Below, one piece after another: positions 1 through 33,914 of a stretch of 64,000 bases of DNA (within the stretch, counting starts at the first letter, position 1; each line of letters begins with the position of its first letter). Below the pieces are notes generated by a model. The model did not search any database and had not been told where the DNA came from. It saw nothing but the letters and a program-made list of their open reading frames with translations. The stretch covers positions 1-64,000 of the forward strand of contig NIVC01002236.1 of NCBI GenBank assembly GCA_002269645.1, read 5' to 3'. This stretch comes from Macrostomum lignano (Eukaryota). A program made the translations under genes and the position numbers.

Positions 1-707
1 GATCATTGGTGCACGAGAAACAGGCAAAAACAGGCTTCCATTTACACGAAAGTCACACCAGATGCAGGCGGTGGTGGCGACTATTAGTGGCAAAGCAATG
101 CAAAATTACGTAGTTTTATTCACATTAAAATACGTCTGCATGCACGAGAATGCACTAACACAAGTGTACTTTAAAGAAAACAAATTTGTAAACGAAAATT
201 TCCTGCAAAGTGCAGCGTTTTCGTTTCAAATTAAAGTGTCTTTTGACGTGAAACTACCAGCGCAGGTCTATTTGAAAATAAATTTTAAGAAAGAAATTAA
301 AAAATTCCGTACTGAACAAACCGAATTATGAAACTCGACGTGCTCTGTTAACAATATCGGTACAAACACGCATTTTTATCATCAGAGCGAGAACTGGATA
401 CGCCTAAAAAAAACTTTTCTGCTAAAAAACTATACAGCTTATATACAGCTATAAAGCAAAACACGCACAACAACAATTCCTATCGTTTCTTCGACTTTGC
501 TTTTTCGAACCGCTCTGCAAAACAAGATACTGGTACTTCGAAGTACGTAGTTCCGAGTCTTACTTTAGTGTACCAAAATATCCAGCATCCTAGACGTTGC
601 ATAATAACTGCTATATGAAATATTTTCCTTAGTCCATATCAAAGCTCAGCCGCTTCAAAACACAATTCTGAAAAAGAGAAACGCCAATCTACGCAGCGTC
701 AGCCGGT

Positions 708-2880
708 TTAGTAGTTTCGGCAGCTTTCGCCTGACCTGCCGCGGAGGCCGAATTCTTGCAGCTCCACCAGCTGCTGCAAGCCGCCGTCCTGATTGTCTTC
801 CTGGTCCGAGTTGCTGGACAGCCGCGGGGGCGGCAGGGCGCTCTCGCAGTGTGTTAGGCAGTCCGCGTCAACGATGCTGCTGTTGCAGCCAAACGCTCGA
901 TCTCTGGCGGCAGCATTCAGGCGACCGGCTCCTCCGGAGCTGTCCGCGCGCCGAATCTCGGTGCCTCCCTGGCGTCGGTGCAGATTGGCGCTGCTCTGGC
1001 GTCGCGAGTCGAAGCTATCGGCCCCAACGTGCCAGTCGAAGCAGCAGAATATTTTAGCGAGAACGCGACGGTAGCCGAGACGGAAGCGCTGCGACATGAA
1101 GTAGTAAACCACCGGGTTGGCTGTGGAGTTGGCAAAGCCAACCAAGTGCAGCATCACCATGGTGAACCCGTAGTTTTTGGCGTAGATGTCTCTGTAAAAT
1201 AGTCCGGCAACGTTCACGGCAAACCATGGCGTCCACGAAACGAGGAACAGAGCCGCGACCACGATCATCATTTTGGCGACCTGATTGGGTGAGAATAATC
1301 ATTGGCTTGATCGGTCTCAGTCAAAATTCTTTTTGTATGCTTATGCCTTTTGCCAGCTAACTAACATGACATTATGTGGCTTAGTTTGTAGAAGACTGGT
1401 TGGTTCCTCCGATCCCTGAGAACGAAAATACTCACCTGCTGGTATGTATCCAGGCGAACATTATTTAAACTTTATGAAAACCACAAGAATTTCTTGTTAC
1501 AGTGAACCCCAACTTTTTTGGCCAAGGGATCAGGACCTCCCTTTTCATTCACCTTCCTCTTGCTCTCCTCCCTGGAGGTCTTCTCCCTGACCGAGCTGCC
1601 CCTGCCGCGGCCATGCCTCCTGGAGCTGACAGCCCGCACGCTGCTCTCATTCTGCCCCGGCACCGGCCGCTGCAAAACCCGCACAATGGAGGCCGAGGTG
1701 AACACCACCACGCAGAGTGGCAGCAGGAACAGCAGGCAGAAGGCGGACATGACGTAAGCGTACCGGCCGCTCGGGCTGAAGCTGTCCATGCAGTGCTGGC
1801 TGCGCATGTCGCCGTAGCCGCTAACGCTGTGGAAGGCCTGGGCGGCCGGGTGCATCGCCTGCACCAGGCAGAAGGCGGCTGGGACGCACCAGGTGAGCAG
1901 AATGAATAGGCAGGTGCGACGGCTTGATTGGAATAGCAGACTGCGCAGCGGGTGCACGATGGCTAGGAACCTGGTTTAGGAGTAAGAGAGTTGCTTTTGA
2001 GCAAATGAGCTCCAAACCATTAAACGAATCTTAACGGTCTGACGACAAAACTTCAAGTTAGCAAAACAGATTTCGGGTTAATATGCCTTTCGCCAAATGC
2101 TCTCACGGTGTTGTAGCCACTGGTTAGAGCGTCGGAACAATTTTCTCGACCCATTCGGAATAAATTGTGTCCTTGAGCAAGACACTTAACTCTGCATTGC
2201 TTCAGTTCACCCAGCTGTAAAATGGGTGCCAGCATTAGCTGGGGTAATTGCTGGTGTGTGTGGCGACCCCCCAGCTCTTGGACTGAACAGCCGTACGCAG
2301 CCTTCAATGCGTACGCTCTAACATTTGTCTTAATTTTTGCATCTAGCTAGTACATGTAGGTCAAATCGTCCAAGAGTCGGATATGCATGCCCCCAAGCCC
2401 CCTTCAGTTAACCAGCATTCTAAGCTAAGGAAGCAAGTCCAAGATAGTAGGCAATGCAATCAGTATAGAACCCGCTCTCAGTTGTCTAACAACTCACCTC
2501 TCAATGCAGATGACAACCAGCGTGAACAGGCTGGCAAAAACCAGCACCATCATGCAGAAGGTGACGAACGCGCAGCCCAGCCGATTGAACAGCTTGGCCG
2601 CAAGCCAACAGGGTCCCAGTAGCTGAAGGCCCTTCAGCGGCACCACCAAGGCGGCGGCCATGAGGTCAGCCGCTGCCAGGTTCAACACGTAGCAGTTGGT
2701 GACGGTTCGCATTGCTCTGTGCAGACAGATGGTGCAGACAACCAGCAAGTTGCCGAAGAACATCATCAGCCCGACGCTGATCCAGACAGCCGCGAGCCCG
2801 GCGCGGACAGCGGGCAGCTGCAGGAGGTCCCAATACTCGGTGGAGTTCACCTCGTGGCAGGTGACAGCAGAAGATGACAT
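708..2880 (-). CDS. Class A peptide GPCR (QRFP/orexin-receptor-like), 3 exons: 2880-2498, 1970-1553, 1280-708; 457 aa
   Basis: GT-AG junctions in matching phase join the exons into one 1374-nt frame. Motifs: TM1 GNLLVV, MRTVTN..LNLAAADL, ERFLAIVHP (rebuilt across intron 1), TM6 SWTP, TM7 NSTANPVVY. The subfamily call rests on recalled motif similarity only. Confidence 0.9.
2105..2310 (+). mobile_element. tRNA-derived SINE with CORE-like domain (family 1, copy 1), in GPCR intron 1
   Basis: Contains GTGTCCTTGAGCAAGACACTTAAC...CTGTAAAATGGG, which resembles the MIR/CORE domain. Alignable by eye to copies at 5216 and 14670. Confidence 0.7.
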
Positions 2881-2968
2881 CGTGCAACTGAGCCAACTAC
2901 TGAGTTGTGTGACAGCCGCACTGTTTAAGAAACTTTAGATGAGTCAGTTGGAGAAGCTGGCACCCCAG

Positions 2969-3022
2969 TTTATAAGCTGCCCGGCCCCCAGATCCCAGCC
3001 CCCGCTCCGCATCACAGCCAAT
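2969..3022 (-). promoter_or_regulatory. Putative TATA (TATAAA, 2974-2969) and CCAAT box upstream of the GPCR
   Basis: Motifs lie about 90 and 140 nt upstream of the ATG at 2880. Motif match only. Confidence 0.35.
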
Positions 3023-3699
3023 GGAAGAAAGAGCGAGAGAGGCGAGAGGAGAGGAAGCTCCTGGTTAGAGGCTGGAGGGAGAGTCTAATTATTAGCGGTT
3101 CGTTTCCAGGTGGAAAGTCATTTTTTAATCATTTTGACTGCCGTCGACCAGATTGCGGCAACTCACCGCCAATTTGATGCTCTTCCGGTTCCATTTTCGA
3201 CTCGTCATGCCGATTGAAGTCGTGAAATCTCCTCAGGGGATTGACGAGATTCAGAGATTGATTCCTATAGTCAAAAGCCTGTCAACAATTAGAAGGCCAA
3301 GGTTAAAAAAACTTTACGCATTTCAGTATCCTTCGGTTTAACGCACTTTTATCATTCTTTTCTGCGCACCAGCCTCAGGATAGCGTCTGGTTCGTTTAAA
3401 CACCATTTCAGCCTGAGCTGGGTTGCTATAGAAACAATTTTGCTCGGCCCGTAAAATATCCCAATGCGCAAATATTTACAGTGCCGAGAAAAAATTCAGT
3501 GCAAACCTGCTGTTTGGGGATATTTTAGACAGTGTCTGCAAGTGCTCTTAAAAATTTGATATTTTACGCACTGGTACACGTGTACCGACCTGTTGAAACA
3601 CATAATTCTTTCGGACACCGCCTAGTCCGTGTGTTTGCTTATAACTTGAACTGCAGGAGCGGCAAGAACTTTTATTGGAGGCCGCAACCGGACGCCAAG

Positions 3700-3990
3700 G
3701 TTTGGTGCCTTGGTGGACGAACCTGTCTCTTGGTGAGCGACCCTGTCTCTTTTGGTGGACGAACCTGTCTCTTGGTGAGCGACCCTGTCTCTTTTGGTGG
3801 GCGCCCCTGTCTCTTGGTGAGCGACCCTGTCTCTTTTGGTGGGCGCCCCTGTCTCTTGGTGAGCGACCCTGTCTCTTGGTGAGCGACCCTGTCTCTTGGT
3901 GGGCACACTTGTCTCTTGGTGGGTGCCCCTGTCTCTTTGTCTCTTGGTGGGCGCCCCTGTCTCTTTGTCTCTTGGTGGGCGCCTCTGTCT
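3700..3990. repeat. Degenerate tandem repeat (CCTGTCTCTTGGTG-based units), part of a dispersed repeat family
   Basis: Repeated cctgtctctt(tt)ggtg units. A related array with a similar flank occurs inverted at about 34650-34820. Confidence 0.8.
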
Positions 3991-5215
3991 TCTCAAAGGC
4001 ACCCTTATTTCGAAAGAGGGTGCTCCTACCCCTGCTTTTTAATGCTCTTTGGATACCACGGTCAAAAGATGACAAAAATAGGTTTGCCATTCGAAAACGC
4101 AGTTTGTCCAGCTTGGTTGCCTCTTTTCGTCAATTTTTGGAGATGCACGATTTTCGTGGGGTTTTCGTGGGGGCTTCCCCGGCCCCTCTCCCTTTATGGT
4201 CCTATCCCATGACCTTGACAGAGAACTTCCCATCAATTGAGAGCTGGAGCAATTTTCGACGATTTTGAAATTCAGCACTGCTAAACAGTGCGAATGAAGC
4301 TGGTCGTTACTCGCTATCCTAAGACCAATTAGATATCAGCGCAGCGTAATCTGCTACATAAATGATTTCGGAGCTCTATAAGCACTCAGCTAAGTCGGTT
4401 AAAGTATAACAATAGGCAGTTTATGCTGAAAATTGCCCTGGGCACCAAAAACTGCTGTATTGCAATTAAACTGTCTGGCTCAGTGTCTCACTGATTTTCG
4501 TGAATATGGACATAATCAAACAGTTTAGGGTGAGGGGGTGCAGACAGAGACGCTTCTTAGCCCAAGGGCTCAGCTCATATGCACTTCAATAAGACTCTTA
4601 GTGAGGCTGTCTTAATGCTCGTAATTCTCAAGATATTCGCAATGATTCGTAATGACTCCTCGAGGTAGGCGGCTCGAAAAAGAGGCTCGAATTCGGTCAT
4701 TTTAAGTAGGAAGCAAAGCGAATAGAAAGGAGCAAAAGCGAATAAGAAAACTGTCCAAGCATGCTCTCTCTCGAGTTCAAAGCTCGAAGCTGTCTCAAGC
4801 TGCCCACTGCTTTTCGCAGAATACTGCGAGTAAGAGCTGGAGACAGGAGAGAAGTAATTCTAAGCAGGTAGCAACTGGTCTCACAGCGGGAAACTTACGG
4901 GTAACCTTACTTGATAGGCAGTCTTTAAATTCTATTTCATTATGCATGCTCGTAAATAATGAAAATTTTCCTGATTTTCCCACGTGTCATAGTCGTCCTT
5001 ACAAGAAGATTTTGGTTGGCTGTTGTGCTTTTTAATTACAGCACTACCATCTAAATGTACGCTGGCATCGCCCTGGCTAAAGCTTTTCTAATGCTGTTGC
5101 ATGTGGCTCGCATTTATATTGTTTATAGTTAAATGTGCAATAACAACATGCCGTAAACACGCCTGATACCCAGAAGAAACCTCTGAACAAATTCTAAGCG
5201 GATCTATTGCAATAG

Positions 5216-5425
5216 ATGGCTAGTGGTAGCCTTGTGGTTTGAGCGTCTGACTCCCCACTTGAAGGTCGGGGGTTCGAGTTCCGATTCCGCTGGAACAATT
5301 TGTATCCATTCTTGAGCAAGACACTTAACCCTGCATTGCTTCGTTCACCCAGCGGGGTAATTGAGGGTGGGTGTGGTGACTCCCCAGTCCTTGAACTGAA
5401 CAGCCGTACGCAACCTTCAGATGCG
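5216..5425 (+). mobile_element. tRNA-derived CORE-like SINE (family 1, copy 2)
   Basis: A-box-like TAGCCTTGTGGT, B-box GGTTCGAGTTCC, then CTTGAGCAAGACACTTAAC core and the shared 3' end GAACAGCCGTACGCAACCTTCAGATGC. Confidence 0.75.
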
Positions 5426-6593
5426 CCGCGCAATAGCGGCGGCTGAGCTGTCGGTAGCACATCTGGCCCAATCGGGGCAGTTTTAATCAGTTATTATTAT
5501 TACGCGTATTATTGCAATACACAAATTCTAGTTAGAGCTACACAATAAAATATAAATATAGTCTAGGAAAAAATGATGCTTCAGTCACACAATATTATTG
5601 CATGCTTTGGTTTTCATGATTTTAACGCTTGTCATGCTGGGTGAGGGGGGGTGACTAATTAGCCGTGTTTGCATTGCCCAGTCAGTCAATTTTTTAAACT
5701 TTACACAGGTAATCTGAGAACTAAGAATTTGCCTCTAACAAACGGCAAAACTGAAAATTTGACAAGCCAAAATGAAATTAGTGCAAGGTTAGCTTGGCTT
5801 TGCTTAAGAGTATTAAATTTCATTTTCTCAGTGATATGGCCTGAAGAAGCCAGAAAAAACTCAAAATTGGTTTTTAGTTTGCTCAGAGCAAAACTGATCT
5901 TGCGGCACGACTTTTACAGCTAATTGCACCCAGCTTTGAATGTTTAATCAGGTTTATAGCGGTGGTTAGTAAGCTTTTCGAGTATATTATGGAAGGACGT
6001 TGTGTCATGGCAATGTCTCGACCAAGGACCACTGGAATGTTATAGTTCTAGTCTAGTAGTCCTTATATTACTCAGGGTATGTTCTCGATTCAGAAACTCA
6101 GACGGTCAGATGCGCATAAATTTGATTAGTCAGTGATAAAAACTGACAACTTTCCATCTCGCTTCAGTAAAATATGTAAGTGTAGCGTCCTTATGATTGT
6201 CCACGCATTGGCTCTAAGGCAACTCTTTGATTCTGCAGCAAACTTGGCTCTGTTGGGTTCAGGCAGACAAACAGATGCAAACCTCAAATTCACTATAAAG
6301 TGTGTCTCTTTATGATTTTTTGCATTACGTTTTTTTTCTCACACACGATAAACTTGTATTCCATCTATCTCAGGCACTACTGCATTTGCGCATTTGCTTC
6401 TTCAACAAAACTTTGCATTCAAGCACAGAATTTATGGCAGCACTTAGCGGTAGGGCCGTAGGGCACGTTTTGGCAAGAACGTCACGTGCTACGAAAATGT
6501 CCAATAAATTTCGTTGGCCCCGAGCTGAGCTCTGGAAAACGTGCTCAGAACCCACACCGCAAACGCACGCATTCGCAGGTGATAGGGTGTGTC

Positions 6594-6656
6594 TATAAAA
6601 GCAACGAATTTCAAAGACCTTTCTTTTCTTGTCAAGCCCGAACCGCACCTGAGTCA
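6594..6656 (+). promoter_or_regulatory. TATA box (TATAAAA 6594-6600) and AP-1 motif (TGAGTCA 6650-6656) of the peptide gene
   Basis: Exact motif matches upstream of ATG 6698. AATAAA at 7332-7337 lies downstream of the stop. Confidence 0.55.
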
Positions 6657-6697
6657 TTGAGAATCTTGCAAGTCACCAACAACGCCAAAGCAACAAC

Positions 6698-7137
6698 ATG
6701 CACCGCCTGACTGTGGCTCTGCTGCTTCTGTCTCTGACTGCTGTGTTTGTCTGCTCGGCCTATGAAGATTCCGATTATGCCGATGACTACGGTGAGACCC
6801 GCATAAGTGGAGATCGAGTTTTTTAAATTAGGTTTTTAGCTATCGGCATAGCCAGCATTTTTTTTTGTAAAAAATTTCAGCCGAGGAACCGGCTCTGGAA
6901 TCTGATGAGGCCGATGACGATGAGGATCTTCAGAAGTGAGTCCAGTGTGGCTTGTAGCTAGCTGCTTCACTGTCTTCTATCTCAAATATTCCTCAAGTTA
7001 TCCCAACTCTTAACTCTGTGTAGCAAAACTACGTAGAAATTAATTTGGCACCAACTGAAATTCCCCCTTATAATTTCAGGCGATGCAGGTGGGTGTACCG
7101 AAGGAAGCACAAGCGGCACACACTGGCGTGTCCTTGA
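6698..7137 (+). CDS. Secreted prepro-peptide, 68 aa, 3 exons: 6698-6791, 6881-6935, 7080-7137; candidate cationic single-disulfide host-defence peptide
   Basis: Strong splice sites (G|gtgaga, tttcag|CC, AA|gtgagt, tttcag|G) in matching phases give MHRLTVALLLLSLTAVFVCSA-YEDSDYADDYAEEPALESDEADDDEDLQ-KR-CRWVYRRKHKRHTLACP*. Hydrophobic signal peptide, acidic propiece, dibasic site, TATA and polyA signal. Confidence 0.85.
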
Positions 7138-7472
7138 GCTGCTCAAGCCAGCCACTTCTCACGGAGGCGACAAATACTTCGAAATTTAGTTTAACAACAA
7201 ATAGTTACTTCAGTGTTCGCCAGAAGCAGTAACCTCTTAAAAAATCTTGTTAAGTCTCTCTAACAGAGTTCTTTCCCCCCGAAGATCGGATGCTAACTTT
7301 TCCATTACACAGATAGCTTGTATATCCACAAAATAAAACACCTGTATAACTTCTCTTGTTTTTTGGCAAAAAGTTACCGCGAAACAATCTAAATATACGA
7401 GTAGCTACTTCAAGTTACCTATCACAGCTTATATTTCTTTCCATACAAATGGAGTGTCAGGCTTTTGTTTGT

Positions 7473-8163
<691 letters not shown>

Positions 8164-8640
8164 GTAGTCGTAGATAATACTTAAAAAGCTTTTGCCCGCC
8201 CGATGCTACTGCAGGTTTGAGCGCGTGCTTATGAGCATTGAAAGCTCTTATCGTAGCGTAGCAAGCCACTCTGGTGCGTCCCTTTTTATTTTGCTTTATA
8301 ATTGCGGCAGAGAATCGAAGCCGCAGCGTTTGTTTATGCCTGGAATTGGGTTTACTTTCTGTCCATTGTTGAAAGCTTCTTTCATTTTATCATCCAGTCT
8401 AAATTACTGTTGCAGTCTCACTTTTGTGCTTTGGGTTGGTACTGTTGTCCACCCCGGGGCAGCTAAGGTGCGTTCATTATTTCAGACGGATTATAATGCA
8501 GAGCATCGTATGCAGGTAAGAGACGAATTAAGTTGCTTAAAGCTTCACAGAGAGTTTGCACAATTTGTTTCGGCTGAAATTAGACAAGCGAACGATTTAC
8601 AGAATGCTGTTATTCGAACTTTATGAGACTCGTTTTTGGC

Positions 8641-9155
8641 CACTGATACTCGAGCTTTGGGGCACTGAGACTCGTACCGCGTGTTTGAGTCACTGAGACT
8701 CGAGTTTTGGGCAACTGAGACTCCTACGTGTTTGAGTCACTGAGACTCGAGTTTTGGGCAACTGAGACTCCTACGTGTGTTGAGTCACTGAGACTCGAGT
8801 TTTAAGCAACTGAGACTCCTACGTGTGTTGAGTCACTGAGACTCGAGTTTTAAGCAACTGAGACTCCTACGTGTGTTGAGTCACTGAGACTCGAGTTTTA
8901 AGCAACTGAGACTCCTACGTGATTTGAGTCACTGAGACTCGAGTTTTAAGCAACTGAGACTCCTACGTGTGTTGAGTCACTGAGACTCGAGTTTTAAGCA
9001 ACTGAGACTCCTACGTGTGTTGAGTCACTGAAGACTCGATTTTTGGGGCAACTGAGAGAGGACTCCTACGTGATTTGAGTCACTGAAGACTCGAGTTTTA
9101 AGCAACTGAGACTCGTACGCTCGTACATGTTTTGAGTCACTGATACTCGAGTTTG
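8641..9155. repeat. 48-bp minisatellite, about 11 units, 10 carrying TGAGTCA
   Basis: Unit GAGTCACTGAGACTCGAGTTTTAAGCAACTGAGACTCCTACGTGTGTT. 48-bp period confirmed at 8781/8829/8877/8925/8973/9021. Confidence 0.95.
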
Positions 9156-9843
9156 GGGCCACATGCGATGGACCAAAATTCATATAAATCTGATTACAGT
9201 ATATGATTAAAGACGAACTTTAAATTTATTAAGTAACCAAGAAAATACAAAATGATGTACTTGAAAAAGTCTTATAGACTTTAGACTTTTTGCGAAAGTC
9301 ACTCACAAAACCGTTAGAACACTGAGTTAAAAACAGAGGATTAGAGGTGGTAGAAGTCACTGAATGAGAATGTATAGCTCTGTGCTTGAGTTTCCTCACG
9401 AATTGCTCTTTCTTTAATACCCCTTGGCTACCAGAGAACTCTGCATTAATTGAGCTGGAGCACTGAAGTTAACTGCAATTGCAAAAGCAATCAGTAGCTA
9501 TTGCAATGGTTAGAGAAGTGGTTAGCGTATTGCGTTTTCTGGTTTTGGCCGCACATAATGACTGCATAGTAGCCAGGGCAATCAAAGGTTTCTATTTTAT
9601 GAATATGAGTCTGATGAGCAGTACTGCACACGTGAGCATCGGTTGTTAGTCTAAGACACGTGAGCTAGTTTCGAGCTGAAAATTCTCTAACAAATTACTG
9701 CATTACCAACAATAAAAGGCTGGCCTTTTGAGTCAGTCTGCATATTTGGGTGGAAGGTTTAGCAATATTTTTGCCCGTGAGTCACGCGCTTCTAGTGCTA
9801 CAACAGCTTTGGCTAAATCATCTGAAACCACTGCGCTGCCATC

Positions 9844-10462
9844 ATGAGCCGCTTCACTGTGACCCTTCTATTCGTGTCTCTATGGTGGTCATGCTAGCTC
9901 GCACAAGTCTTGCGGAATTCAACGGCGATTCTAACTACGGAAATTATGGCGATTGCAGTTCTTTTGCTTTAAAGCAGCTTTTTTCTTGTGATATGCATGT
10001 ATTATGCATTCAGATGAAACAACCAAGGGTACTGCTACGTACTGTATTAATTAATGCATCCATGCTTTTGTGACGGTGTTGTTCAGAATTTAAGAACTCA
10101 CCGAAAGAACGGAGACAGAGTGACAAATATTGGGGCCGTGCACAGGTGTCAAAGTCAATAGCAAAATTCAAAAGATGCTTCAATATATTTATGTACCTCT
10201 GTATACATGCACTTTGCCTCATGCATATTACTTTCCAGGTGCTTTAGAAGAGCCCGCGACAGTCGACGAGTCTGAGACTTCTGATGACGAAAGCGGCGAT
10301 GTTGAAGAGTAAGTTCAAAGCACTGATAAACTGCACAGTTTAATATGAGTTATTGAGAAGTCACAGAACTAACACCTACTACATGTACATGTATATCGCA
10401 ATTTCAGACGCTGCAAATGGAAGTTCGACAGGAAAATTGGTTATTTCAGAAACTTCTGCTAA
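9844..10462 (+). pseudogene. Paralogue of the 6698 peptide gene: exon 1 from 9844 (frameshifted), exon 10239-10308, exon 10408-10462; mature peptide CKWKFDRKIGYFRNFC
   Basis: MSRFTVTLLFVSL matches MHRLTVALLLLSL, then a 1-nt frameshift (TAG 9895-9897); the shifted frame continues SLAEFNGDSNYGNY. The acidic exon (phase 1 to 2) contains EEPA. The last exon encodes R-CKWKFDRKIGYFRNFC* with the same C-X14-C spacing. The exon-1 donor is non-canonical (g|gcgatt). Assembly error cannot be excluded. Confidence 0.75.
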
Positions 10463-11433
10463 AATGATATTTGCAACATTTGAATTTAGTATATACAGCT
10501 GGATAAATTGGGCCAGCTTAAGGTCTTCATTTTTTCACTGCGCTGCACGTACTCCACCAAGGGTTGAATGGAAAAATTTAATTATATAAAATCAATAAAA
10601 TTTATTTACTTTATGACTTGTGTAGAAATAACATGTGGCAAAAAAATGACAAAATTTTCTTAATAGTGAAGTCACAAAGCTCTTGCATGGTTTTTCGCTT
10701 AATTGATGTGGTAACTATACTTGCATGCTTATGTACTCTAATGTATAGCGCGCTGTTCAGTCTTGAGAACTACATGTACTGTATAGCCTCCATTACGTTT
10801 ATCCTTAAACGTTTATCCCATAAATTTCGTTTTCTTCATCATTCTAGATATCATGACAAAGAGCTAGAGTTACCTTTATATGAATTACATGCTGTAACTA
10901 CCACGAACTAGCAGCTTTGCATACAAAAAGTACACGTACCGTTACCAATTAGTAACAATGCAACACTACATGCAAGGACATGTATACTTCAATGTACATA
11001 CATGTACATGTACATGTACGTGGTCTTTTTAATTTGGCAAGGACCACTGCTGTATATAACAGTTATATACTGCGGCCCTTGCATTTTGGTACAGTATCAA
11101 ATATTTTGTATGACTAAATTTACTATGGAATTATTAGTACAAACCAATAATGTTTTTAGGAATAAAGTTATTATCCTAACCGCCACAAACCCTCTGTAAA
11201 AAAATTGTTCAACTGACAAATGCACTCATAACTGAACGTAATCAGCCAAGTAGATTTTGTAAGATTTCGTAGCAAAACTTACCGGCATCTAAATATTGTT
11301 TTAACTGACAATTTTAAAATATGTAATTTGTAAGAAACACTTACGATGAACTCTGACGTGAGGCCGTGAGCATTTGACTCGACACTCGAGGCTGACACAA
11401 ATGATACCAACTGTCAATAATCAAGATATTTTA

Positions 11434-11962
11434 GGCAGTGCTTATCCCCACGGTACCGTAGGAATAATTTCTGTCTTATTCCAACGGTACCGTGCGAATA
11501 ATTTTCTGTTTATCCGCACGGCACACTGAGGAGATAGCTGCCCTATCTTCTACATATGCCGTGTGGGAAGTTTAGTACATACGATTTGAGTGCAGTATAA
11601 CAACTTTGTTGAATTATTGTTGAATAAGTATACAGAAGGGTATCAGTAAAGCAGAATAACACGCATTTACACATGCATATACTAGTCTAGAACTGATTCG
11701 AGTTTATACATCATCAAGATCAACAGCTTCTTAGTATCCTCAGTTCAAATTCCCTTTCAATAAGCTATAAACTATTCACGCACAGCATATGTAGCAGATA
11801 AAAACCGATAGGGCAGCTAGTAAAGCAGAGGGAATAAAACAGAGGACGTGTAGGGCAGCTATCTCGTCAGTGTGCCGTGCGGATAAGCAGAAAATTATTC
11901 GCACGGTACCGTTGGAATAAGACAGAAATTATTCCTACGGTACCGTGCGGATAAGCACTGCC
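11434..11962. mobile_element. Non-autonomous DNA transposon (MULE/Mutator-type MITE), 529 bp
   Basis: About 111-bp near-perfect TIRs (GGCAGTGCTTATCC...GCTGCCCTA) and a perfect 9-bp TSD GATATTTTA at 11425-11433 and 11963-11971. Confidence 0.9.
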
Positions 11963-12237
11963 GATATTTTAACACATCGCAAATGCAAAAAACACGGTTT
12001 ACAACTTTAATAATCTTTTTTAGATGAATTATTTTTTGTTGTTGTGCTCACCATAAAATTTTCTAATCGACTAAATGTTTATTTTACTAATACCATGCCA
12101 TGGTACTTTTTCTTGTTGAATCACTTAGGCGTGTAAACCTGGACCTATAGGCTGTACGAGTATTATACAATGGGATTTGTATTGTATTTGTATTGACCAT
12201 CCATATTGTTAGCCTGATTTTCATATTGGTTCATAGG

Positions 12238-12681
12238 CATAGGCCTAGGAACATTTCAAAAAGTGGGGGGCCAGATAGGCCCTAACCCAGGTTCAGTGGC
12301 GGATTTGAGGGGGGGGGGCGCACACGGTGCATGCCCCCTGTCGAGTTAGATTTAGATTTTTCTATTTTTATATGGAAAAAGCAAATTATCATGTGCCAAT
12401 TATTTTTAGAATTGGTATTGTCAGCACTCATTTTAGCACTACAGCCACAGGCACTCATTTTAGCACTGCAGGCACTCATTTTAGCACCACAGATGCTATG
12501 TTTTGTTGCTATGTAGCAAAATACATTCATGCAAAGCAGCAAAATAGTAAAAGAAAAGATCAGCAAAAAGTCTACATTCTACATTTAAAATGTGGAATGG
12601 CCAAATACCATTATGGGCCCCCCACTTTAAAAAGTAAAGAGGGGGGCATGGCCCCACTGTCCCCTCATTCTTACACCTATA
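12238..12681. mobile_element. MITE-like composite element with imperfect inverted ends and internal GGCACTCATTTTAGCAC repeats
   Basis: AAAAGTGGGGGGCC near the left end versus GGCCCCCCACTTT near the right end; CATAGGCCTAGGAAC versus TCTTACACCTAT termini. No TSD confirmed. Confidence 0.45.
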
Positions 12682-14092
12682 GGCCTATAATATTGATTTG
12701 CTGGCTATCTTGTAGTTTTGCATGTTAAATTATTTTTTTTGAAAATAATATCTTTTAAGTAACTTTAAGCTTAGTAAGGGACAGAATAGATAATAAGGGA
12801 TAACACGGAGTAAGATAAACATAGAAGCAACTGTCTAGGCCTAATTTTGTTAGTCTGCAATTGAAATGGATTATAATGGATAATATTAATAATGTGATAC
12901 CCAGTAGAGGAAGTTCCCAAAAGTCTTGTTCGGGAAGAGGTGTTGCCAGAGGTACTCTTGTAGGTATGACTCAAATAGTCCATCGGATGTACCATGCATC
13001 TAGCAAAATTTGGCCTTCACGTGAGCCTATGATGGTGTTAGTATAGATGTAGCTTGGTAACAGGCAGGATTGTTGTTGGGGCAGCAGGTTGGCCAACCAG
13101 CCATGAATTGCACTCAAATGTCCCTGATTCTTTAAAAACTATAAGGTTAAAGATTGTTTATTGGTTATTTCTCTAACTATTTAATCTAAAAAAAGCATAG
13201 TGGCTTGCCATGGCTATATATATGGTAATTTAATTATTGAAGGTTATAGATACAAATGTTTTATATCAAACATACCAATATAGATATGATTATGTGAACA
13301 CATTTTTCATGTCTAATAATATTTGTTAATTAATAACAATATTTTTAATAATATTTAATATTCATTATTATAATATTATAATATTATTATTTATTATTAA
13401 ATAATTATTATTTAAAATTTAATATTTTTAATATTTTAAAAAGACTTTTAGAGCCCTTGATTTCATGGGTTAGAGCAACTTAGAAATTAATGAATTTTGC
13501 TAGTTTTTTTAAGCTTTTATAAGAGGAACTTTCAAGTCCCTAGGCTGGCAACAAGGACTTAATCAATAGAGATTTTGATAGCTACCACATATACATTGTT
13601 TGATTGGATAGTAGGGGCTAAAGTAAAGATAAATGTAGTTATAGCCATTTTTATGCAATAAATATGTTTTACTTTTTCTTGGGTTCTTGAAGATGTTCCT
13701 AGAAATAGAACCCACTGCTCCTGAAGTAGCTAGATAGTACCATTGTACTACCTATCAATTTGCCTGAAAATAAACCTAAAACGTTAGCCTTGACTTGGTA
13801 GGGTTGCTGCCACCTTGGTGTGCGGACTCGACGCATTGGCAGAGTTGTCTATCTGTCACCTAAAAAAAATAATGAAGTCGCTTGGAGCAAAGGCAAATCT
13901 GAAAAATGTCTTGACAGTTGATCGTCTTAGTAGAATGCTGCTCAAACCTGAAAACCTGAAAAACCTGAAATGAGAGAGGAGAGCTCGGAGAAGGCTTCAC
14001 AAGTCAGCCACGATGCTCCGCGAGACAACGCAGTCTGGAGAAAAATGGCTCCCAGATGCTTTGTATTTATAGCCAAGTGGACCCCCAAAAGT

Positions 14093-14597
14093 CACGTGAG
14101 TTTCATACGGTGAGCGTGTGAAACTTCCTCATTTGGTCACAAAAATCGTGCGAGCGACGCGTGATTCAAGGCCAACATCCAAATAAGGCAACCCTGTCAT
14201 GCAGCAGTGGCGTGACTCAAGGTCAGTGGCCACGCACAGTGTGCGTGCACAGTCACGTGCTTTTCTATGCTAAAAATAGAACATGGGCAGATGAGTCATC
14301 TTGTTTACTCCCTCTAGGCAGCCATTTGACTCCGCACAGGTGATGAGTCATTCTGCTACACCTCCTCAGCGCGAGTGGGAAGACATTAAGTGTGGCTGCC
14401 CGCGCCTGCTTTGGCGATGAGTCATCAGGCAGTAAACACTTAGGCCCAGCACAGGGTATCTCTCTCACTAGATCAGGTGGACTGAGCTACTGTGCAGCGG
14501 ATCACAGCACTCTTAGGGAAAGCTAGTGAATGCTTTTGAATAACCATCTAGCCTAGCAGCCAGTCACTACAAATGCAAAGATATTGTTAATGAGTCA
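14093..14597. promoter_or_regulatory. Cluster of 5 AP-1 motifs and 2 CACGTG E-boxes
   Basis: TGA(C/G)TCA at 14213, 14292, 14344, 14418 and 14591; CACGTG at 14093 and 14254. Non-repetitive context. Confidence 0.5.
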
Positions 14598-14669
14598 GGT
14601 TAAACTGTTGTTATAATTTTATAATAAAAATAATTATTATTAACTGGCAGCTCAGCTACAGCTATTTCA

Positions 14670-14870
14670 CAATGCATCTGAAGGCTGCGTAATACTGTTC
14701 AGTCCAAGGACTAGATACTAGCACAGCACCCATTTTACTAGCACCCATTTTACAGCTGTGTGAACTGAAGCTATGCAGAGTTGAGTGTCTTGCTCAAAGA
14801 CAAATTATTGCAGTGGGCTTGGGAATTGAAACCCCAACCTTTCAATTATTAGTCAGATGTCATTCTTTAC
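14670..14870 (-). mobile_element. tRNA-derived CORE-like SINE (family 1, copy 3)
   Basis: The reverse complement contains TTTGAGCAAGACACTCAACTCTGCATAGCTTCAGTTCACACAGCTGTAAAATGGG and the same 3' end as copies 1 and 2. Confidence 0.7.
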
Positions 14871-15617
14871 TTCCTAACTATATTATATATAGTGAATGCT
14901 AACAGAACTGTTGCCATTGGATTTAATATAATTCAAAGTTTTAAAGGAAATTTTAATTTGAGTACAGATGGATAGGAAAATTTTGGTTATAGAGCAACTC
15001 TAGATAAGCATAATCCTTGGATTCCAGATTCCAAAAGCTTGTAATCCCAGAATTTTGAATCCTAATAAATCTTGGAATCTGGGATTGAAATCCCTAGTCA
15101 ATTACGAGTAATATTGACATCTTGCAGTTTTTCTTACCTCTGGTGTTACTCTTTTGGTTTTTCACCAGTTTTTATTAGTTCACTGGCTGATATTGCTACT
15201 TAAAGCAGTAGAAGCTGATGCAAAAATTTGTATGGCACTCGCTTAGGTAATGTTTTATAGCATTATTCTATGCCATTAAAAATTCTCCACGTCTGTTCCT
15301 TCTGCTTGATGGTAATTTTTCCTTGGCAGTGATTGCCAACCCTGTTGTCAGTTGCTGAATAATTAATGTTGTTCTTGTCCAGTTAGATCTTTGATGTCAT
15401 GGAAACATGTCATTAAAAATTCATTCCTAATCCTCATACCTACTCTAGTTTTTTATTAGTGTCTGGTTGGTCTCTATCTCTTCCACCGGACACTATATTT
15501 TTGAGCGAGCATTCTTAGTAGCATCCTGACCTCTGAGCCACCTTCGATCAGAGCAGGCAGAGAAAATTCGGCAAAACTCAGATTTTAGTTGACAGGATTG
15601 CCAAATTGTTAAACAAA

Positions 15618-16967
15618 ATGGCTCAGACTAAGCCTTCATCAACAACTGAGAAGCCACAGCCGCCTCAATACTTTGGCCCGCGCATTTATCACGAAGTGCC
15701 TGACTGCAGAGAGGGTGAGTTGCCTGGTCTAGTTAGGTTTCTGCTAAAAGCATCTTAGTAAAGATTAAGATCGACAACCCCATTGAGTCAAAACGTTTAT
15801 CTACCAGATGAATTTATACAGTCTTTCTAACAAGCTAGATGAACTTTATGCTCATAAAGTGGAGCCCGAGTAACCTATGTACACAAAAGAAACGCCATTC
15901 TGCTCATAGTGACACCAGGAAGCTGGGTTTGGCAAAAAAGCGACTAAAATTGGACTTGAGAACGGGGAGAACAAGCCAAGGGATAATTAGGGACTCCACC
16001 TTATGAGCTTTAGTTGACACGCCTTTCACATCCTAGACTACTTAATATAACGAGAAGACCATGCAGTAGTAGCGTTGTAAAATTTCTTATGAAGCCTCCC
16101 ACAAAAAACGACTTTGAAATGCAAGCTCTTTATCATAGTAGCCTCGTTTTTATTGTGATATTTGCTTAATAGACTTCGGTAGTATTGCTTTCAACTGCAC
16201 TTACTCAACATCCAACAGTTGCGAGCAACGCTGACCCGCTCTCCAGCTGGCTTGGCCGGCAGCCGCGCTGCTGCCGCTGCCCCTCCTTCTGCTCCACTCC
16301 GGCTCGGCTGTTTCTGAGCCTGACTGGCATAGCCGTCTCCTTAGCTCTAATTGCCGCCATTCTTCTAATTGTTGGCGGCAGGTTCTCGCTGTCGGCTAGT
16401 TCTATTGCTGGCTTAGTAACCATGGCAACTGGCGCTTTAGTTGCTTGTCTAGCTGTCTGTCTCTGGCTAAGCCTGCTCTGCCGCTGCCGGTGCACCTGTC
16501 GAAGGCGTTCATTAATCGGCGCTAGCACGGCTGGCAGCTGCGGAAGTGTCCGTCAGAATGATCGAGATGCCATCCTCACTGACGAAGCTGGCGAGCCGCA
16601 GTTGTCCGACTGTGCACCCGGGCTTCAGCAACAGCATAAGCGGCCGAATTGCAGATTTCAACCGCCTCGTCTTGAACCAGTGTACCAGCATCAGCAAGAG
16701 ACTGTTAATAACGGCGCTGTTGTTGCTGTTAAACCCTTCTCTGCAGAGCCCGGCTCTGCATCGGAATCATCAGGCTCGCTCTCGAGCTCATCGAAGTCTT
16801 ATTCCTGCACTTCTTCGTCTCCTTATTCGTCGTCAGCTTCAACTGAGACTTCTTCCTCTTCTGGCTCGAGCAGCTGTTCGAGTTGTTCGTCTTCTGGAGC
16901 GTCTTCAGAGGTCGATAGAAGCAGCAAAGACAATAGCGGAAATCTTCGCACGGTTGTGAAGTCGTAA
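15618..16967 (+). CDS. Uncharacterised two-TM membrane protein, 281 aa, exons 15618-15714 and 16219-16967
   Basis: ATG in AAAATG context, G|gtgagt donor and caacag|TT acceptor in phase 1. Two hydrophobic helices flanked by Cys clusters, and a long Ser-rich tail. Confidence 0.75.
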
Positions 16968-17909
16968 CTGCTCCCGCTGCTGCAGCCTGCTTGACGATTT
17001 TGATTTACCATGCTGTTTTTCTGTCCGTTTATATTCTCTAATAAGCCACGATTTAAGTATTGATTTTAATTTTGAGCACGCTGAGCACCTGCGCAAGTCA
17101 ATGTTGTTTAAAATAAAAGTTGAACATTTATCACCAGACTACGGATATGATAACTAACTTTCTTGAATACAGTAAATGCCATATCTGTGTCTAGTAAACT
17201 ACGTTAATTAAAATATATCGTTTTACGAGCGACTACAACCAGCGCTGAAGAAATTCTGCCTATTCCGCAGGCGCGCAGGCACGCAATCATACACACGCTC
17301 ACACAGTGTGTTCAGCGCCCAGACTGGAGCTTCTGGTAAAAATTGCTCCGTAATTTTCAAATAAGGAGGCTGCATTGATCAAAGCTTCTTGCTAATTTTC
17401 TTGTTCTGTTTTCTTTCTCTGTTTGTGACTATTTTTTTCATTCTTTATATTATCTATTCTTCGAAAAGAGTGTATTTCTGCCGAGACTAGCGTCTTTAAA
17501 ACCTTATTCTTGAATGTAGAATTTAACTTAAGAGCAGATCCTTGATCATTATGTCCTGGGAAGTAGGTATTAGTTGAATTTATAATTGATTTTATTAAAC
17601 AAAACTGGCTTCCTTGTAAGGAATATCGCTTGTCCGCCTTGTAAGCGTCAAAATGCTACTAATGAAAATTCGGATACTTTTTATTGATACGTGCTTTTTG
17701 TTTTTCAATAGTTTGCTTAAGTTGAATAGAAAGGGTCATAATTTAACTGTAGGTTCGTGCTTTTTCGTTAGTATTATTGATGGAAGACCTTTGCAAAAGT
17801 AGGTCCTAATAAGTGCTAACATGTTAACTGAAAGGGAAACTTATCTTGTCACTACCGCTTAACATTCGTCACTTAAATCCTAATAACGAATGTTTAAATT
17901 GATTTGCAG

Positions 17910-20096: not shown

Positions 20097-20139
20097 GATC
20101 CGCTGCGTGAATAGTTGGAATGACCTGGTGAATCGAAGG

Positions 20140-20433
20140 AGCTTGTGAATGGAGTGAGCTTGTGAACGGAGTGAGCTTATGAACGGAGTGAGCTTGTAAA
20201 TGGAGTGAGCTTGTGAATGGAGTGAGCTTGTAAATGGAGTGAGCTTGTGAATGGAGTGAGCTTGTAAATGGAGTGAGCTTGTGAACGGAGTGAGCTTGTG
20301 AACGGAGTGAGCTTGTGAACGGAGTGAGCTTGTGAACGGAGTGAGCTTGTGAACGGAGTGAGCTTGTGAACGGAGTGAGCTTGTGAACGGAGTGAGCTTG
20401 TGAACGGAGTGAGCTTGTGAATGGAGTGAGCTT
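20140..20433. repeat. 17-bp minisatellite (GTGAACGGAGTGAGCTT), about 17 units, just 3' of the TACO1 stop
   Basis: Direct inspection of the period. Confidence 0.95.
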
Positions 20434-33472: not shown

Positions 33473-33914
33473 TCGATTTTTATGTGTTGAATTTATATCT
33501 TCAGATTTAGTTTCTTGTAAGAACTACTGATGGATAACTTCTTCTATTTAACGCAGTTTTACGACAAGCAAGAAAGATAAGAGTGTAGACATAGATAAAA
33601 GACAAAATTACTGACGGCAAAACATAATTCGTGCACGAGACAAGTTTTTCGCATTTTCTCGACATATTTCTTAGAAAAAAGAAATTGGTCCAATTCCCAT
33701 AAAATTAAATTGACAAAACGAGCTCCATGCAGTGTTGGTACCAGCAACTACTTCTATGTTGAAATTAAGTCAAATAAATCCAGTGAATTCGTGTAGATCT
33801 TACAGATTGTACTCTGACAACAGATTTGTCGTTGAAAAATGCGACTAAGCTTCCAGAATTGAAGTGGTCACTTTTCATTGTCAAGGTTGGAAAAATAGGC
33901 TTTTTAATGGTATC

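What the first reader, a model, noticed from the sequence alone, without database searches (positions are those of the whole stretch)
9729..10600. Second family member 3 kb downstream defines the motif C[RK]Wx[YF]xRKx7C but appears broken in exon 1
Seen: the signal start (MSRFTVTLLFVSL versus MHRLTVALLLLSL), the acidic middle exon (both contain EEPA, both phase 1 to 2) and the last exon (R-CKWKFDRKIGYFRNFC*, net +4, same C-X14-C) are all homologous to the 6698 gene. This independently supports both gene models. Only C1, W3, R7, K8 and C16, plus a basic residue at position 2 and an aromatic at position 5, are shared. Exon 1 has a 1-nt frameshift and a GC in place of the GT donor, and a possible 15-nt phase-1 microexon lies at 10014-10028. 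Inference: birth-and-death evolution with a rapidly diverging mature loop, as in immune effector clusters, or an intact gene with assembly errors.
Basis: partly seen in the sequence, partly recalled or inferred. Interest (0 to 1): 0.75.

Follow-up and report, generated by a model that had tools for sequence, protein, structure and literature searches.

The report
Broken copy of flatworm peptide gene
The flatworm Macrostomum lignano has two neighbouring genes for small secreted, positively charged, disulphide-looped peptides; the second gene is damaged in this stretch of DNA but intact in a near-identical duplicate region, which is ordinary gene decay after genome doubling in a peptide family with no known relatives.

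Summary
The window is the first 64 kb of Macrostomum lignano contig NIVC01002236.1 (assembly Mlig_3_7).

An unannotated three-exon paralogue (gene B, 9844-10462) lies 3.1 kb downstream of the annotated 68-aa gene Mlig016089.g1 (gene A, 6698-7137). B has the same exon phases as A, a related signal peptide, an acidic EEPA spacer and a terminal cationic C-X14-C loop. Composition-preserving shuffles give z of about 3-4 for each of three segments and 5.2 combined. Synonymous sites are saturated. The loop has diverged about twice as fast as the signal.

**The window copy of B is broken, and the lesions can be named.** A 94.5-97% identical duplicate locus on contig NIVC01002472.1 carries an intact 76-aa gene B. 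Compared with it, the window copy has:
- a 2-nt TA insertion (9881-9882), which gives a stop at 9895;
- a 5-nt insertion that destroys the splice donor.

**Two points in the finding change.** The GC donor is not itself a defect, because the intact copy has consensus GCAAGT, a GC-AG intron. The proposed microexon is not needed.

**Reading.** This is an old tandem pair in which one duplicate of B was recently disabled, or less likely mis-assembled. There are no relatives among billions of proteins and no Pfam family. The host-defence function is inferred only.

The parts
6594..6601 (+). TATAAAAG box of gene A, about 100 nt upstream of the ATG
   Evidence: Read; pattern positions. Promoter function is inferred.
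6698..6791 (+). Gene A exon 1 (94 nt, ends in phase 1): signal peptide MHRLTVALLLLSLTAVFVCSA followed by YEDSDYADDY. Donor CG|GTGAGA.
   Evidence: The annotated gene range 6698-7137 and its 68-aa product match exactly.
6881..6935 (+). Gene A exon 2 (55 nt, phase 1 to 2): acidic spacer AEEPALESDEADDDEDLQ(K)
7080..7137 (+). Gene A exon 3 coding part: (K)R processing site, the loop CRWVYRRKHKRHTLAC, then P and the stop codon
7332..7337 (+). AATAAA poly(A) signal of gene A
9711..9719 (+). AATAAAAGG, a TATA-like element upstream of gene B. It is conserved in the L002 copy.
   Evidence: Function is inferred.
9844..9948 (+). Gene B exon 1 as it stands in the window (105 nt; the intact copy has 103 nt). 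MSRFTVTLLFVSL is in frame 0 and VVMLARTSLAEFNGDSNYGNY in frame +2.
   Evidence: alignment to the intact copy
9881..9882 (+). 2-nt TA insertion (equally placed as AT at 9882-9883) that shifts the frame. It is absent from L002, and gene A reads TCTCTG at this point.
   Evidence: outgroup read
9895..9897 (+). Premature TAG stop, 17 codons after the ATG
9949..9956 (+). Damaged donor of intron 1: GCGATTGC, where the intact copy has GCA(AGT). This is G9951 in place of A plus a 5-nt insertion at 9952-9956.
10239..10308 (+). Gene B exon 2 (70 nt, phase 1 to 2): (G)ALEEPATVDESETSDDESGDVE(E). Acceptor TTTCCAG, donor GTAAGT. It is 3 nt (one Ala) shorter than in L002.
10408..10462 (+). Gene B exon 3 coding part: (E)R, the loop CKWKFDRKIGYFRNFC, then the stop codon. 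Identical in L002.
10594..10599 (+). AATAAA poly(A) signal of gene B

Best explanation
**What it is.** Two three-exon genes in tandem encode small secreted prepropeptides of one family found so far only in Macrostomum lignano: gene A (6698-7137, annotated as Mlig016089.g1) and gene B (9844-10462, unannotated).

**Exon layout, shown by the sequence**
- Exon 1 gives a signal peptide and the start of an acidic spacer.
- Exon 2 gives the rest of the spacer. The spacer has net charge -15 in A and -13 in B.
- Exon 3 gives a basic cleavage site (KR in A, a single R in B) followed by a 16-residue loop rich in Arg, Lys and aromatic residues, bounded by two Cys (C-X14-C), and then the stop codon. The loop has net charge +6 in A and +4 in B.

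**How it probably works, inferred**
- The signal peptide is removed and the two Cys form a disulphide.
- The anionic propiece masks the cationic loop during transport.
- A furin or prohormone-convertase type protease releases the loop.
- The loop acts outside the cell, most likely as a membrane-active host-defence peptide. I put this last step at about 0.4.

**History**
- The A/B duplication is old: synonymous sites are saturated.
- Signal and spacer were conserved while the loop diverged.
- Much later, the whole locus was duplicated with the rest of the genome.
- The window carries the duplicate in which B was disabled by a TA insertion (stop after 17 codons) and by a 5-nt insertion that ruins its GC-type splice donor.
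- The other duplicate (L002 15076-15688) keeps an intact 76-aa reading frame with a consensus GC-AG first intron.

**What the confidence covers.** The figure of 0.7 is for the structural and evolutionary account (paralogy, layout, disabled duplicate of an intact gene). The host-defence function on its own is about 0.4.
For: **Organism, locus and annotation**
- Identity of organism and locus.
- Gene A's model equals the deposited protein. That annotation was built from RNA-seq transcript assemblies (PMC5730564).

**Homology of A and B**
- Reciprocal best tblastn hits, collinear.
- Shuffle tests.
- Same exon phases.

**Old duplication under constraint**
- pS is 0.5 to above 1. pN is 0.22 in the signal, 0.27 in the spacer and 0.53 in the loop. 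Signal against loop: P=0.012.

**The duplicate locus**
- P0003 (Mlig016089.g2, with V6A) lies on NIVC01002472.1.
- L002 is collinear with window 1-15765 at 94.5-97.3% identity.
- Substitution divergence is 1.4-2.8%. This matches the 2.2% reported between the three subgenomes of this species (PMC10733133).

**Intact B in L002, and the lesions in the window**
-.
- No canonical rescue model exists in the window.

**Charges**
-.

**Conserved loop positions**
- Positions 1, 3, 5 and 7 are conserved, plus 2, 8 and 16. Conservation at every second residue is what a beta strand with one conserved face would show.
Against: **Gaps in the evidence**
- No reads, no expression data and no peptide data could be reached.
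- Gene B is not annotated in either copy. It may be silent, or dead for reasons not visible in the reading frame.
- B has ER where A has KR, in both copies. Release of the B loop is therefore uncertain.

**Structure**
- AlphaFold2 without an alignment gave a low-confidence model (mean pLDDT 64). It drew a helix, not a hairpin, over the loop.
- The two-face hydrophobicity test on a hairpin register goes the expected way in both peptides but is not significant (P=0.15 and 0.19).

**Assembly quality**
- The assembly comes from PacBio reads and was polished with short reads. 93% of short read pairs map to multiple loci in this genome. Errors near 9881 and 9951 cannot be excluded.

**Sample size**
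- With only two independent mature sequences, the 'motif' is a pairwise consensus. The loop interior alone gives P=0.03.
Confidence: 0.7

Rival explanations
1. The window copy of gene B is intact in the animal. The TA insertion and the 5-nt donor insertion are assembly or polishing artefacts of Mlig_3_7.
For: - The assembly is Canu on PacBio reads, polished with Pilon using Illumina and RNA-seq data.
- 93% of read pairs map to multiple loci, and 36% of assembly length is in chimeric scaffolds.
- Exon 3 and most of exon 2 are identical to the intact copy.
Against: - Two separate multi-base differences (2 nt and 5 nt) sit within 75 nt. As I recall, typical residual PacBio errors are single-base homopolymer indels, and neither site is a homopolymer.
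- Indels between the two loci are common everywhere: 6 events in about 1260 non-coding nt around B. Three events in or at B's exons is what neutral divergence predicts.
- Polishing copies variants from real reads. It rarely invents them.
Confidence: 0.17
2. The peptides are signalling molecules (neuropeptide or hormone-like cyclic peptides), not defence effectors. The conserved N-terminal half of the loop, C[RK]Wx[YF]xRK, would be the part that contacts a receptor.
For: - The prohormone layout is present: signal peptide, spacer, KR site, C-terminal disulphide loop.
- The conserved residues cluster in one half of the loop.
- Rhodopsin-type GPCR genes are frequent in the window. This is weak and probably coincidental.
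Against: - The mature part diverges faster than the signal and spacer. As I recall, neuropeptide paralogues usually show the opposite.
- There is no amidation Gly.
- B lacks a dibasic site.
- No homologue was found in any other flatworm or animal, and there is no Pfam hit.
Confidence: 0.15
3. The peptides belong to another class of fast-evolving secreted products, such as seminal fluid or prostate proteins or gland secretions used in feeding or against predators.
For: - The family is lineage-restricted, small, secreted and rapidly diverging.
- Reproduction-related genes of Macrostomum are reported to evolve rapidly (title and abstract of PMC7336406, seen).
- Gene A has a sub-threshold resemblance to the conotoxin precursor profile.
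Against: - Mlig016089 was not found in the held supplementary tables of the papers searched, but those tables are partly truncated.
- Nothing links the genes to reproduction.
Confidence: 0.2
4. Gene B is dead in both copies. The open frame in L002 is only a remnant that has not yet collected a lesion.
For: - B is unannotated in both loci, although the annotation is transcript-based.
- KR has become ER at the processing site in both copies.
- The first intron has a GC donor.
Against: - Since the old A/B split, with synonymous sites saturated, B has kept its ATG, a plausible signal peptide, all splice sites and phases, the Cys spacing and the stop position.
- The GC donor has the full GCAAGT consensus.
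- A short, possibly low-expressed or inducible gene is easily missed by transcript assembly.
Confidence: 0.2
5. The resemblance of B to A is chance between two short low-complexity stretches.
For: - Exon 2 alone is acidic low complexity and is not significant at the DNA level.
- The exon 3 BLAST hit ranks only eighth in the window.
Against: - The combined composition-preserving shuffle gives z=5.2, 0 of 5000.
- The three hits are collinear, on one strand and within 620 nt, with matching intron phases and splice signals.
- The arrangement is preserved in the duplicate locus.
Confidence: 0.02

Closest known systems
Single-disulphide cationic beta-hairpin antimicrobial peptides: arenicin-1/2, thanatin, lactoferricin B, ranacyclins (reviewed in PMC13001179)
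   Same: - Short length (16-17 residues here; 17-25 in those families).
- Strongly cationic, with Trp, Tyr or Phe residues.
- One Cys pair closes a large ring.
- Released from a larger precursor.
- From my memory of the sequences, lactoferricin B ([25 protein letters not shown]) and arenicin-1 (RWCVYAYVRVRGVLVRYRRCW) have a similar C-R-(R)-W / C-V-Y start to the ring. This is a lead, not a test.
   Different: - No detectable sequence relationship: phmmer against all PDB chains finds nothing at E up to 10.
- Ring size is C-X14-C, against C-X16-C in arenicin and lactoferricin B (from memory) and C-X6-C in thanatin (from memory).
- The precursor has no BRICHOS domain, unlike arenicins.
- Hairpin fold and activity are untested.
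Precursors with a conserved signal and propiece and a hypervariable mature peptide: conotoxins (Pfam PF02950) and frog-skin peptides
   Same: - Signal peptide, then propiece, then a basic site, then a short Cys-containing C-terminal peptide.
- The signal is more conserved than the mature part.
- Gene A gives a weak hit to the Conotoxin profile over residues 4-57 (E=0.075).
   Different: - The score of 14.4 bits is far below the family cut-off of 25.1, and gene B gives no hit.
- There are only two Cys, with no cystine-knot framework.
- The animal is a diatom-eating flatworm (my own knowledge), not a venomous one.
Computationally predicted flatworm AMP-like peptides and mesco-2 of Mesocestoides corti (PMC10414684, PMC13149500)
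   Same: - Flatworm origin.
- Secreted, cationic and Cys-containing.
- No homology to the classical lophotrochozoan AMP groups, which that study found absent from flatworms.
- The Mlig_3_7 proteome was part of that screen.
   Different: - Mesco-type peptides are helical with a small C-terminal CXXXC loop. Here the whole mature peptide is one 16-residue ring.
- Neither Mlig016089 nor the peptide string was found in the held part of their table, which was truncated when stored.
Loss of one redundant copy after whole-genome duplication, giving an unprocessed pseudogene; three subgenomes in M. lignano (PMC10733133)
   Same: - Two collinear loci with 1.4-2.8% substitutions and many indels, as reported for the S, L1 and L2 subgenomes.
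- The broken copy keeps its introns and flanks, and its lesions are derived.
   Different: - Which subgenome each contig belongs to was not determined.
- A possible third copy was not reached.
GC-AG introns
   Same: The intact gene B donor is ATG|GCAAGT. From established knowledge, the minority GC donors compensate with a near-perfect match at the remaining donor positions.
   Different: - Use of this donor is not shown by any transcript.
- In the window copy the consensus is destroyed: GCGATT.

Membership tests
Cationic disulphide-cyclised beta-hairpin AMPs (class, not a homologous family) | Short mature peptide (about 11-25 aa) with net positive charge | tested here: met
   17 aa at +6 (A) and 16 aa at +4 (B), assuming cleavage after KR in A and after R in B.
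Cationic disulphide-cyclised beta-hairpin AMPs (class, not a homologous family) | Intramolecular disulphide closing the hairpin | not testable with these tools
   Exactly two Cys, at ring positions 1 and 16, in A and B and in both loci. Disulphide formation is not shown.
Cationic disulphide-cyclised beta-hairpin AMPs (class, not a homologous family) | Beta-hairpin conformation with an amphipathic distribution of side chains | tested here: inconclusive
   - AlphaFold2 single-sequence model has low confidence (pLDDT 49-67 over the loop) and is helical.
- The face-hydrophobicity test goes in the expected direction but gives P=0.15 and 0.19.
- Conserved residues fall at positions 1, 3, 5 and 7.
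Cationic disulphide-cyclised beta-hairpin AMPs (class, not a homologous family) | Antimicrobial activity | not testable with these tools
Arenicin / BRICHOS-related AMPs | BRICHOS domain in the precursor | tested here: not met
   No Pfam domain in either precursor. The precursors are only 68 and 76 aa long.
Conotoxin precursors (Pfam PF02950) | Score at or above the Pfam gathering cut-off (25.1 bits) | tested here: not met
   Gene A scores 14.4 bits (E=0.075). Gene B gives no hit.
Neuropeptide prohormones | Signal peptide plus mono- or dibasic cleavage sites flanking the bioactive peptide | tested here: met
   KR before the loop in A and a single R (ER) in B. This feature is shared with AMP and toxin precursors, so it does not discriminate.
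Neuropeptide prohormones | Mature peptide conserved among paralogues and orthologues, or membership of a known peptide family | tested here: not met
   - The loop is the most diverged part: pN 0.53 against 0.22 for the signal.
- No relatives.
Unprocessed (duplicated) pseudogene | Homologous to a functional-looking gene, retains introns and flanks, carries disabling mutations | tested here: met
   - The gene-2 region (window 8777-11433) is 97.3% identical to the locus with an intact gene B.
- Frameshift with a stop at 9895-9897, and a destroyed donor.
- No canonical rescue model.
- Whether the lesions are real in the animal is not testable here.
GC-AG intron | GC donor with strong consensus at the other positions, and an AG acceptor | tested here: met
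   L002: ATG|GCAAGT ... TTTCCAG|G, 285 nt. Actual splicing is not testable here.

The most novel reading that the evidence does not exclude
A and B would be the founding members of a Macrostomum-restricted family of single-disulphide, beta-hairpin-type host-defence peptides with an anionic, Tyr-rich propiece that may be sulphated. I know of no hairpin-class antimicrobial peptides described from Platyhelminthes, a phylum reported to lack the classical lophotrochozoan AMP groups. On this reading gene B is a live, unannotated gene that uses a GC-AG intron.
Probability: 0.3. Interest if true: 0.55.

Novelty: new member of a known kind. Interest (0 to 1): 0.35.

Why it matters
**If the functional reading is right.** This is a compact, easily synthesised pair of candidate defence peptides. 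They come from a transgenic-ready flatworm model whose innate immune effectors are almost unknown. A screen of flatworm proteomes found none of the classical lophotrochozoan AMP groups (PMC10414684).

**Whatever the function.**
- A real gene, B, is missing from the Mlig_3_7 annotation at two loci.
- A GC-AG intron could easily be mistaken for a lesion.
- The locus is a clean small example of one duplicate decaying after the recent genome duplication while its twin stays intact.

**For the scan.** An apparent 'broken exon' in this neopolyploid assembly should be checked against the other subgenome copies before it is called a pseudogene or an assembly error.

Tried and rejected
- **Rfam** on the whole window: nothing.
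- **Homologue searches** with gene A, with an A+B profile through the word index, and with a full HMMER scan of 1.84 billion representatives: only gene A itself, plus one spurious acidic low-complexity hit, P0002. In libraries this large, a paralogue as diverged as B is from A would probably score below threshold. Further diverged members in M. lignano are therefore not excluded.
- **Chimeric query of neighbouring ORFs**, meant to reach the duplicate locus through annotated neighbours: 8000 candidates and none significant. That search was wasted. The duplicate locus was reached instead through the 90% cluster of gene A.
- **Pfam** and **PDB sequence searches**: no membership.
- **AlphaFold2** on gene A alone: low confidence, so not used as evidence.
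- **Supplementary tables** of seven papers searched for Mlig016089 or the peptide string: no hit. Several files were truncated.
- **Rescue models for the window copy** (alternative ATGs, every GT or GC donor, with and without the 15-nt microexon):
  - From the ancestral ATG, only a poor GC donor (CAT|GCTAGC at 9892) gives an open frame.
  - Models from the internal ATGs at 9882 and 9891 lack a signal peptide.
  - All were rejected.
- **Microexon 10014-10028**: rejected as unnecessary, because the intact copy is in frame without it.
- **Weak 'RCRW' and 'AYSDSDY' hits at L002 1846-1950**: different frames and the wrong order, so chance.
- **The 2.7-kb L002-specific insertion**: no family member in it.
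- **TGAGTCA enrichment** (25 matches against 9.4 expected): due to one minisatellite, so not treated as regulatory evidence.
- **dN/dS**: not interpretable, because synonymous sites are saturated.
Full report
**Where the window comes from.** The conceptual product of the upstream gene is 100% identical over 68 residues to NCBI 'hypothetical protein BOX15_Mlig016089g1 [Macrostomum lignano]', PAA59732.1. The gene sits at 6698-7137 of contig NIVC01002236.1 of assembly GCA_002269645.1 (Mlig_3_7), and the window starts at base 1 of that contig. The DNA is therefore eukaryotic, from a free-living flatworm. Rfam finds nothing in the window.

**Neighbours.** The surrounding genes do not form an immune cluster:
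- rhodopsin-type GPCR genes;
- a TACO1/YebC gene;
- a GC-rich non-LTR retroelement;
- a DDE transposase;
- a kinase exon.

**Checking the observation.** Both gene models are in the sequence as described.
- Gene A has exons 6698-6791, 6881-6935 and 7080-7137, with GT-AG introns.
- A encodes a signal peptide, an acidic spacer (net -15), KR, and the loop CRWVYRRKHKRHTLAC followed by P (net +6, plus two His).
- Gene B starts at 9844. Exon 2 is 10239-10308 and exon 3 is 10408-10462, ending ERCKWKFDRKIGYFRNFC* (loop net +4; spacer -13).
- The middle exons are 55 and 70 nt, both running from phase 1 to phase 2.
- The strict motif occurs only at these two places in six frames. That count is circular.

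**Independent tests of homology.**
- With gene A's exons as tblastn queries, the top non-self hit for exon 1 (tied) and for exon 2 lie in gene B, in order and on the same strand. The exon 3 hit is weak, ranking eighth.
- DNA shuffles give z=4.1 for exon 1 and z=5.5 for the acceptor plus exon 3. Introns, UTRs and upstream DNA show nothing.
- Shuffling residues within each segment controls for the signal-like, acidic and basic compositions. It gives P=0.003 (signal), 0.010 (exon 2) and 0.006 (exon 3), with a summed z of 5.2 (0 of 5000). The Tyr-rich tail of exon 1 is not significant, and the loop interior alone gives P=0.03.
B is a paralogue of A.
- The 'motif' rests on two independent sequences only and should be read as a pairwise consensus.

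**Age and pattern of divergence.**
- Synonymous differences between A and B are saturated (pS 0.5 to above 1).
- Non-synonymous differences are 0.22 per site in the first 13 signal codons, 0.27 in the spacer and 0.53 in the loop. Signal against loop gives Fisher P=0.012.
- The tandem duplication is therefore old. Both genes were under constraint for most of that time.
- The mature part changed fastest. From established knowledge, this is usual for defence peptides and toxins and unusual for neuropeptides.
- dN/dS proper cannot be estimated.

**Is B broken?** In the window, yes.
- From the ATG the frame reads MSRFTVTLLFVSLWWSC and stops at TAG 9895-9897.
- The rest of exon 1 (VVMLARTSLAEFNGDSNYGNY) is open only in frame +2, and the donor is G|GCGATT.
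- I enumerated every ATG and every GT or GC donor, with and without the proposed microexon. No canonical model from the ancestral start gives an open frame.

**The decisive comparison.**
- The 90% cluster of gene A has a second member, PAA57557.1 (Mlig016089g2, differing by V6A), on contig NIVC01002472.1. I fetched 20.4 kb around it as L002.
- L002 is collinear with window 1-15765 at 94.5-97.3% identity.
- In L002, gene B is intact. Its exons are 15076-15178, 15464-15536 and 15634-15688. The product is 76 aa: MTRFTVTLLFVSLVVMLARTSLAEFNGDSNYGNYGALEEPATVDESETSADDESGDVEERCKWKFDRKIGYFRNFC.
- Compared with it, the window copy shows:
  - an extra TA at 9881-9882, which is the frameshift;
  - GCGATTGC where L002 has GCA at the start of intron 1 (a substitution plus 5 inserted bases, 9951-9956);
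  - one Ala codon fewer in exon 2;
  - a Ser-to-Thr difference at codon 2;
  - an identical exon 3.
- Gene A reads TCTCTG at the frameshift site, as L002 does. The TA insertion is therefore derived in the window copy.

1. The frameshift is a 2-nt insertion, not a 1-nt change.
2. The GC donor is not a lesion. The intact copy has ATG|GCAAGT, the consensus that functional GC-AG introns show (established knowledge). What is damaged in the window is that consensus.
3. The intact copy joins exon 1 (103 nt, phase 1) directly to exon 2. The 15-nt microexon at 10014-10028 is not needed and has no support.

**What the two loci are.**
- Substitution divergence is 2.8% around A and 1.4% around B, with frequent indels.
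- M. lignano DV1 is a recent polyploid whose assembly holds three paralogous subgenomes. They differ by about 2.2% in SNPs (1.1% in coding sequence) and by many indels (PMC10733133). The assembly has 180 Mb in duplicated blocks of at least 95% identity (PMC5730564).
- The two contigs fit that description.
- The simplest account is that one redundant copy of B lost function after genome duplication.
- The number of indel events in or at B's exons (three) is what the non-coding indel rate around it predicts (about one per 200 nt). This is consistent with relaxed constraint on this copy.
- Gene A shows 3 substitutions (1 non-synonymous) and no indel in 207 coding nt between the copies. That is too few to test.

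**Could the lesions be assembly errors?**
- The assembly is Canu on PacBio reads, polished with Pilon, in a genome where most short reads map to multiple loci. I cannot exclude errors.
- The lesions are two separate multi-base differences at sites that are not homopolymers. I put the artefact reading at about 0.17. Copy-specific k-mer counts in the raw reads would settle it.

**Is B a live gene at all?**
- Neither copy is annotated, although the annotation is built from RNA-seq transcript assemblies.
- Both copies have ER instead of KR before the loop.
- Against this, B has kept its start codon, signal peptide, all splice sites and phases, the Cys spacing and the stop position across a duplication old enough to saturate synonymous sites.
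- I judge the L002 copy probably functional (about 0.7), possibly low-expressed or inducible.

**What the peptides do.** Nothing here tests function.
- *Shown:* a secretory signal, a strongly anionic spacer, a basic site, and a C-terminal cationic aromatic ring of 16 residues bounded by Cys.
- *Inferred:* disulphide closure, convertase release, charge masking by the propiece, and extracellular action.
- *Loop conservation:* conserved positions are 1, 3, 5 and 7, plus 2, 8 and 16. Conservation at every second residue fits a beta strand with one conserved face (Cys, Trp, Tyr/Phe, Arg).
- *Hairpin register:* on a hairpin register, the face holding the conserved odd-position residues carries most of the aromatic residues in both peptides. 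The test is not significant (P=0.15 and 0.19).
- *Model:* AlphaFold2 without an alignment is uninformative.
- *Nearest functional analogues:* the single-disulphide cationic hairpin AMPs arenicins, thanatin, lactoferricin B and ranacyclins (PMC13001179).
- *No membership anywhere:* no PDB sequence hit, no BRICHOS or other Pfam domain, and only a sub-threshold resemblance of gene A to the conotoxin precursor profile (14.4 against 25.1 bits).
- *Screens of flatworm proteomes:* a screen that included Mlig_3_7 found none of the classical lophotrochozoan AMP groups and predicted many Cys-rich AMP-like peptides (PMC10414684). Gene A does not appear in the part of their table that is held.
- *My weighting:* host defence about 0.4; other fast-evolving secreted roles (seminal fluid, gland secretion) about 0.2; signalling peptide about 0.15; the remainder unknown.

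**Verdict.**
- The family is an orphan pair of prepropeptide genes. A is annotated as hypothetical and B is unannotated.
- The copy of B in this window is a disabled duplicate of an otherwise intact gene.
- The GC donor is native to B, and the microexon is unsupported.
- The finding is a modestly interesting new member of a well-known kind of gene, not a new kind of system.

Noticed in passing
window 7473-8163; L002 10774-10827: A (TATC)n microsatellite of about 173 copies lies between the two peptide genes. The same site in the duplicate locus has only 13.5 copies.
   Followed up: partly
window 8641-9119; L002 13999-14390: A 48-bp minisatellite lies 0.7-1.2 kb upstream of gene B, with 9.8 copies in the window and 7.7 in L002. 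Each unit contains the AP-1-like heptamer TGAGTCA. This array accounts for the window-wide excess of that heptamer (25 found against 9.4 expected).
   Followed up: partly
window 6650, 9729, 9778: Single TGAGTCA heptamers lie between the TATA-like element and the ATG of both genes. The one at 9729 reads TAAGTCA in the duplicate locus. Possibly regulatory, possibly chance.
   Followed up: no
L002 11127-13831 (breakpoint at about window 8465): A 2.7-kb AT-rich (GC 0.34) segment is present in the duplicate locus and absent from the window. It has no match elsewhere in the window and no family member in it.
   Followed up: partly
window 21873-22820, 26083-26928, 41628-42497 (minus strand): Three near-identical rhodopsin-family GPCR reading frames (7tm_1, E=1e-30 for the first) carry an NRC motif where most receptors have DRY. 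From memory this resembles melatonin-type receptors. They suggest local segmental duplication about 20 kb apart.
   Followed up: no
window 708-1957 (minus strand): Two adjacent reading frames match consecutive parts of a rhodopsin-type GPCR (7tm_1 positions 88-190 and 204-260). No gene is annotated here in the deposited record.
   Followed up: no
window 28000-33500: A GC-rich block (0.59 against about 0.42 around it) holds overlapping minus-strand reading frames, including an endonuclease-reverse transcriptase domain. It is a non-LTR retroelement, apparently degraded.
   Followed up: no
window 46548-47794 (minus strand): DDE_3 transposase reading frames, a Tc1/mariner-like DNA transposon.
   Followed up: no
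window 17904-18371 and 19584-20096 (plus strand): Two exons of a TACO1/YebC-family gene. A 17-residue-unit tandem repeat runs on the opposite strand at 19900-20466.
   Followed up: no
window 50360-50492: A run of 133 N (a scaffold gap). A short repeat borders it; ORFs running into the gap translate as (DRQT)n on the minus strand and (CLSV)n on the plus strand.
   Followed up: no
window 9921-9927 and 9947-9953: The damaged donor region of the window copy (GGCGATT GC) repeats the heptamer GGCGATT found 26 nt upstream in the same exon. The 5-nt insertion may therefore have arisen by local templated copying.
   Followed up: no
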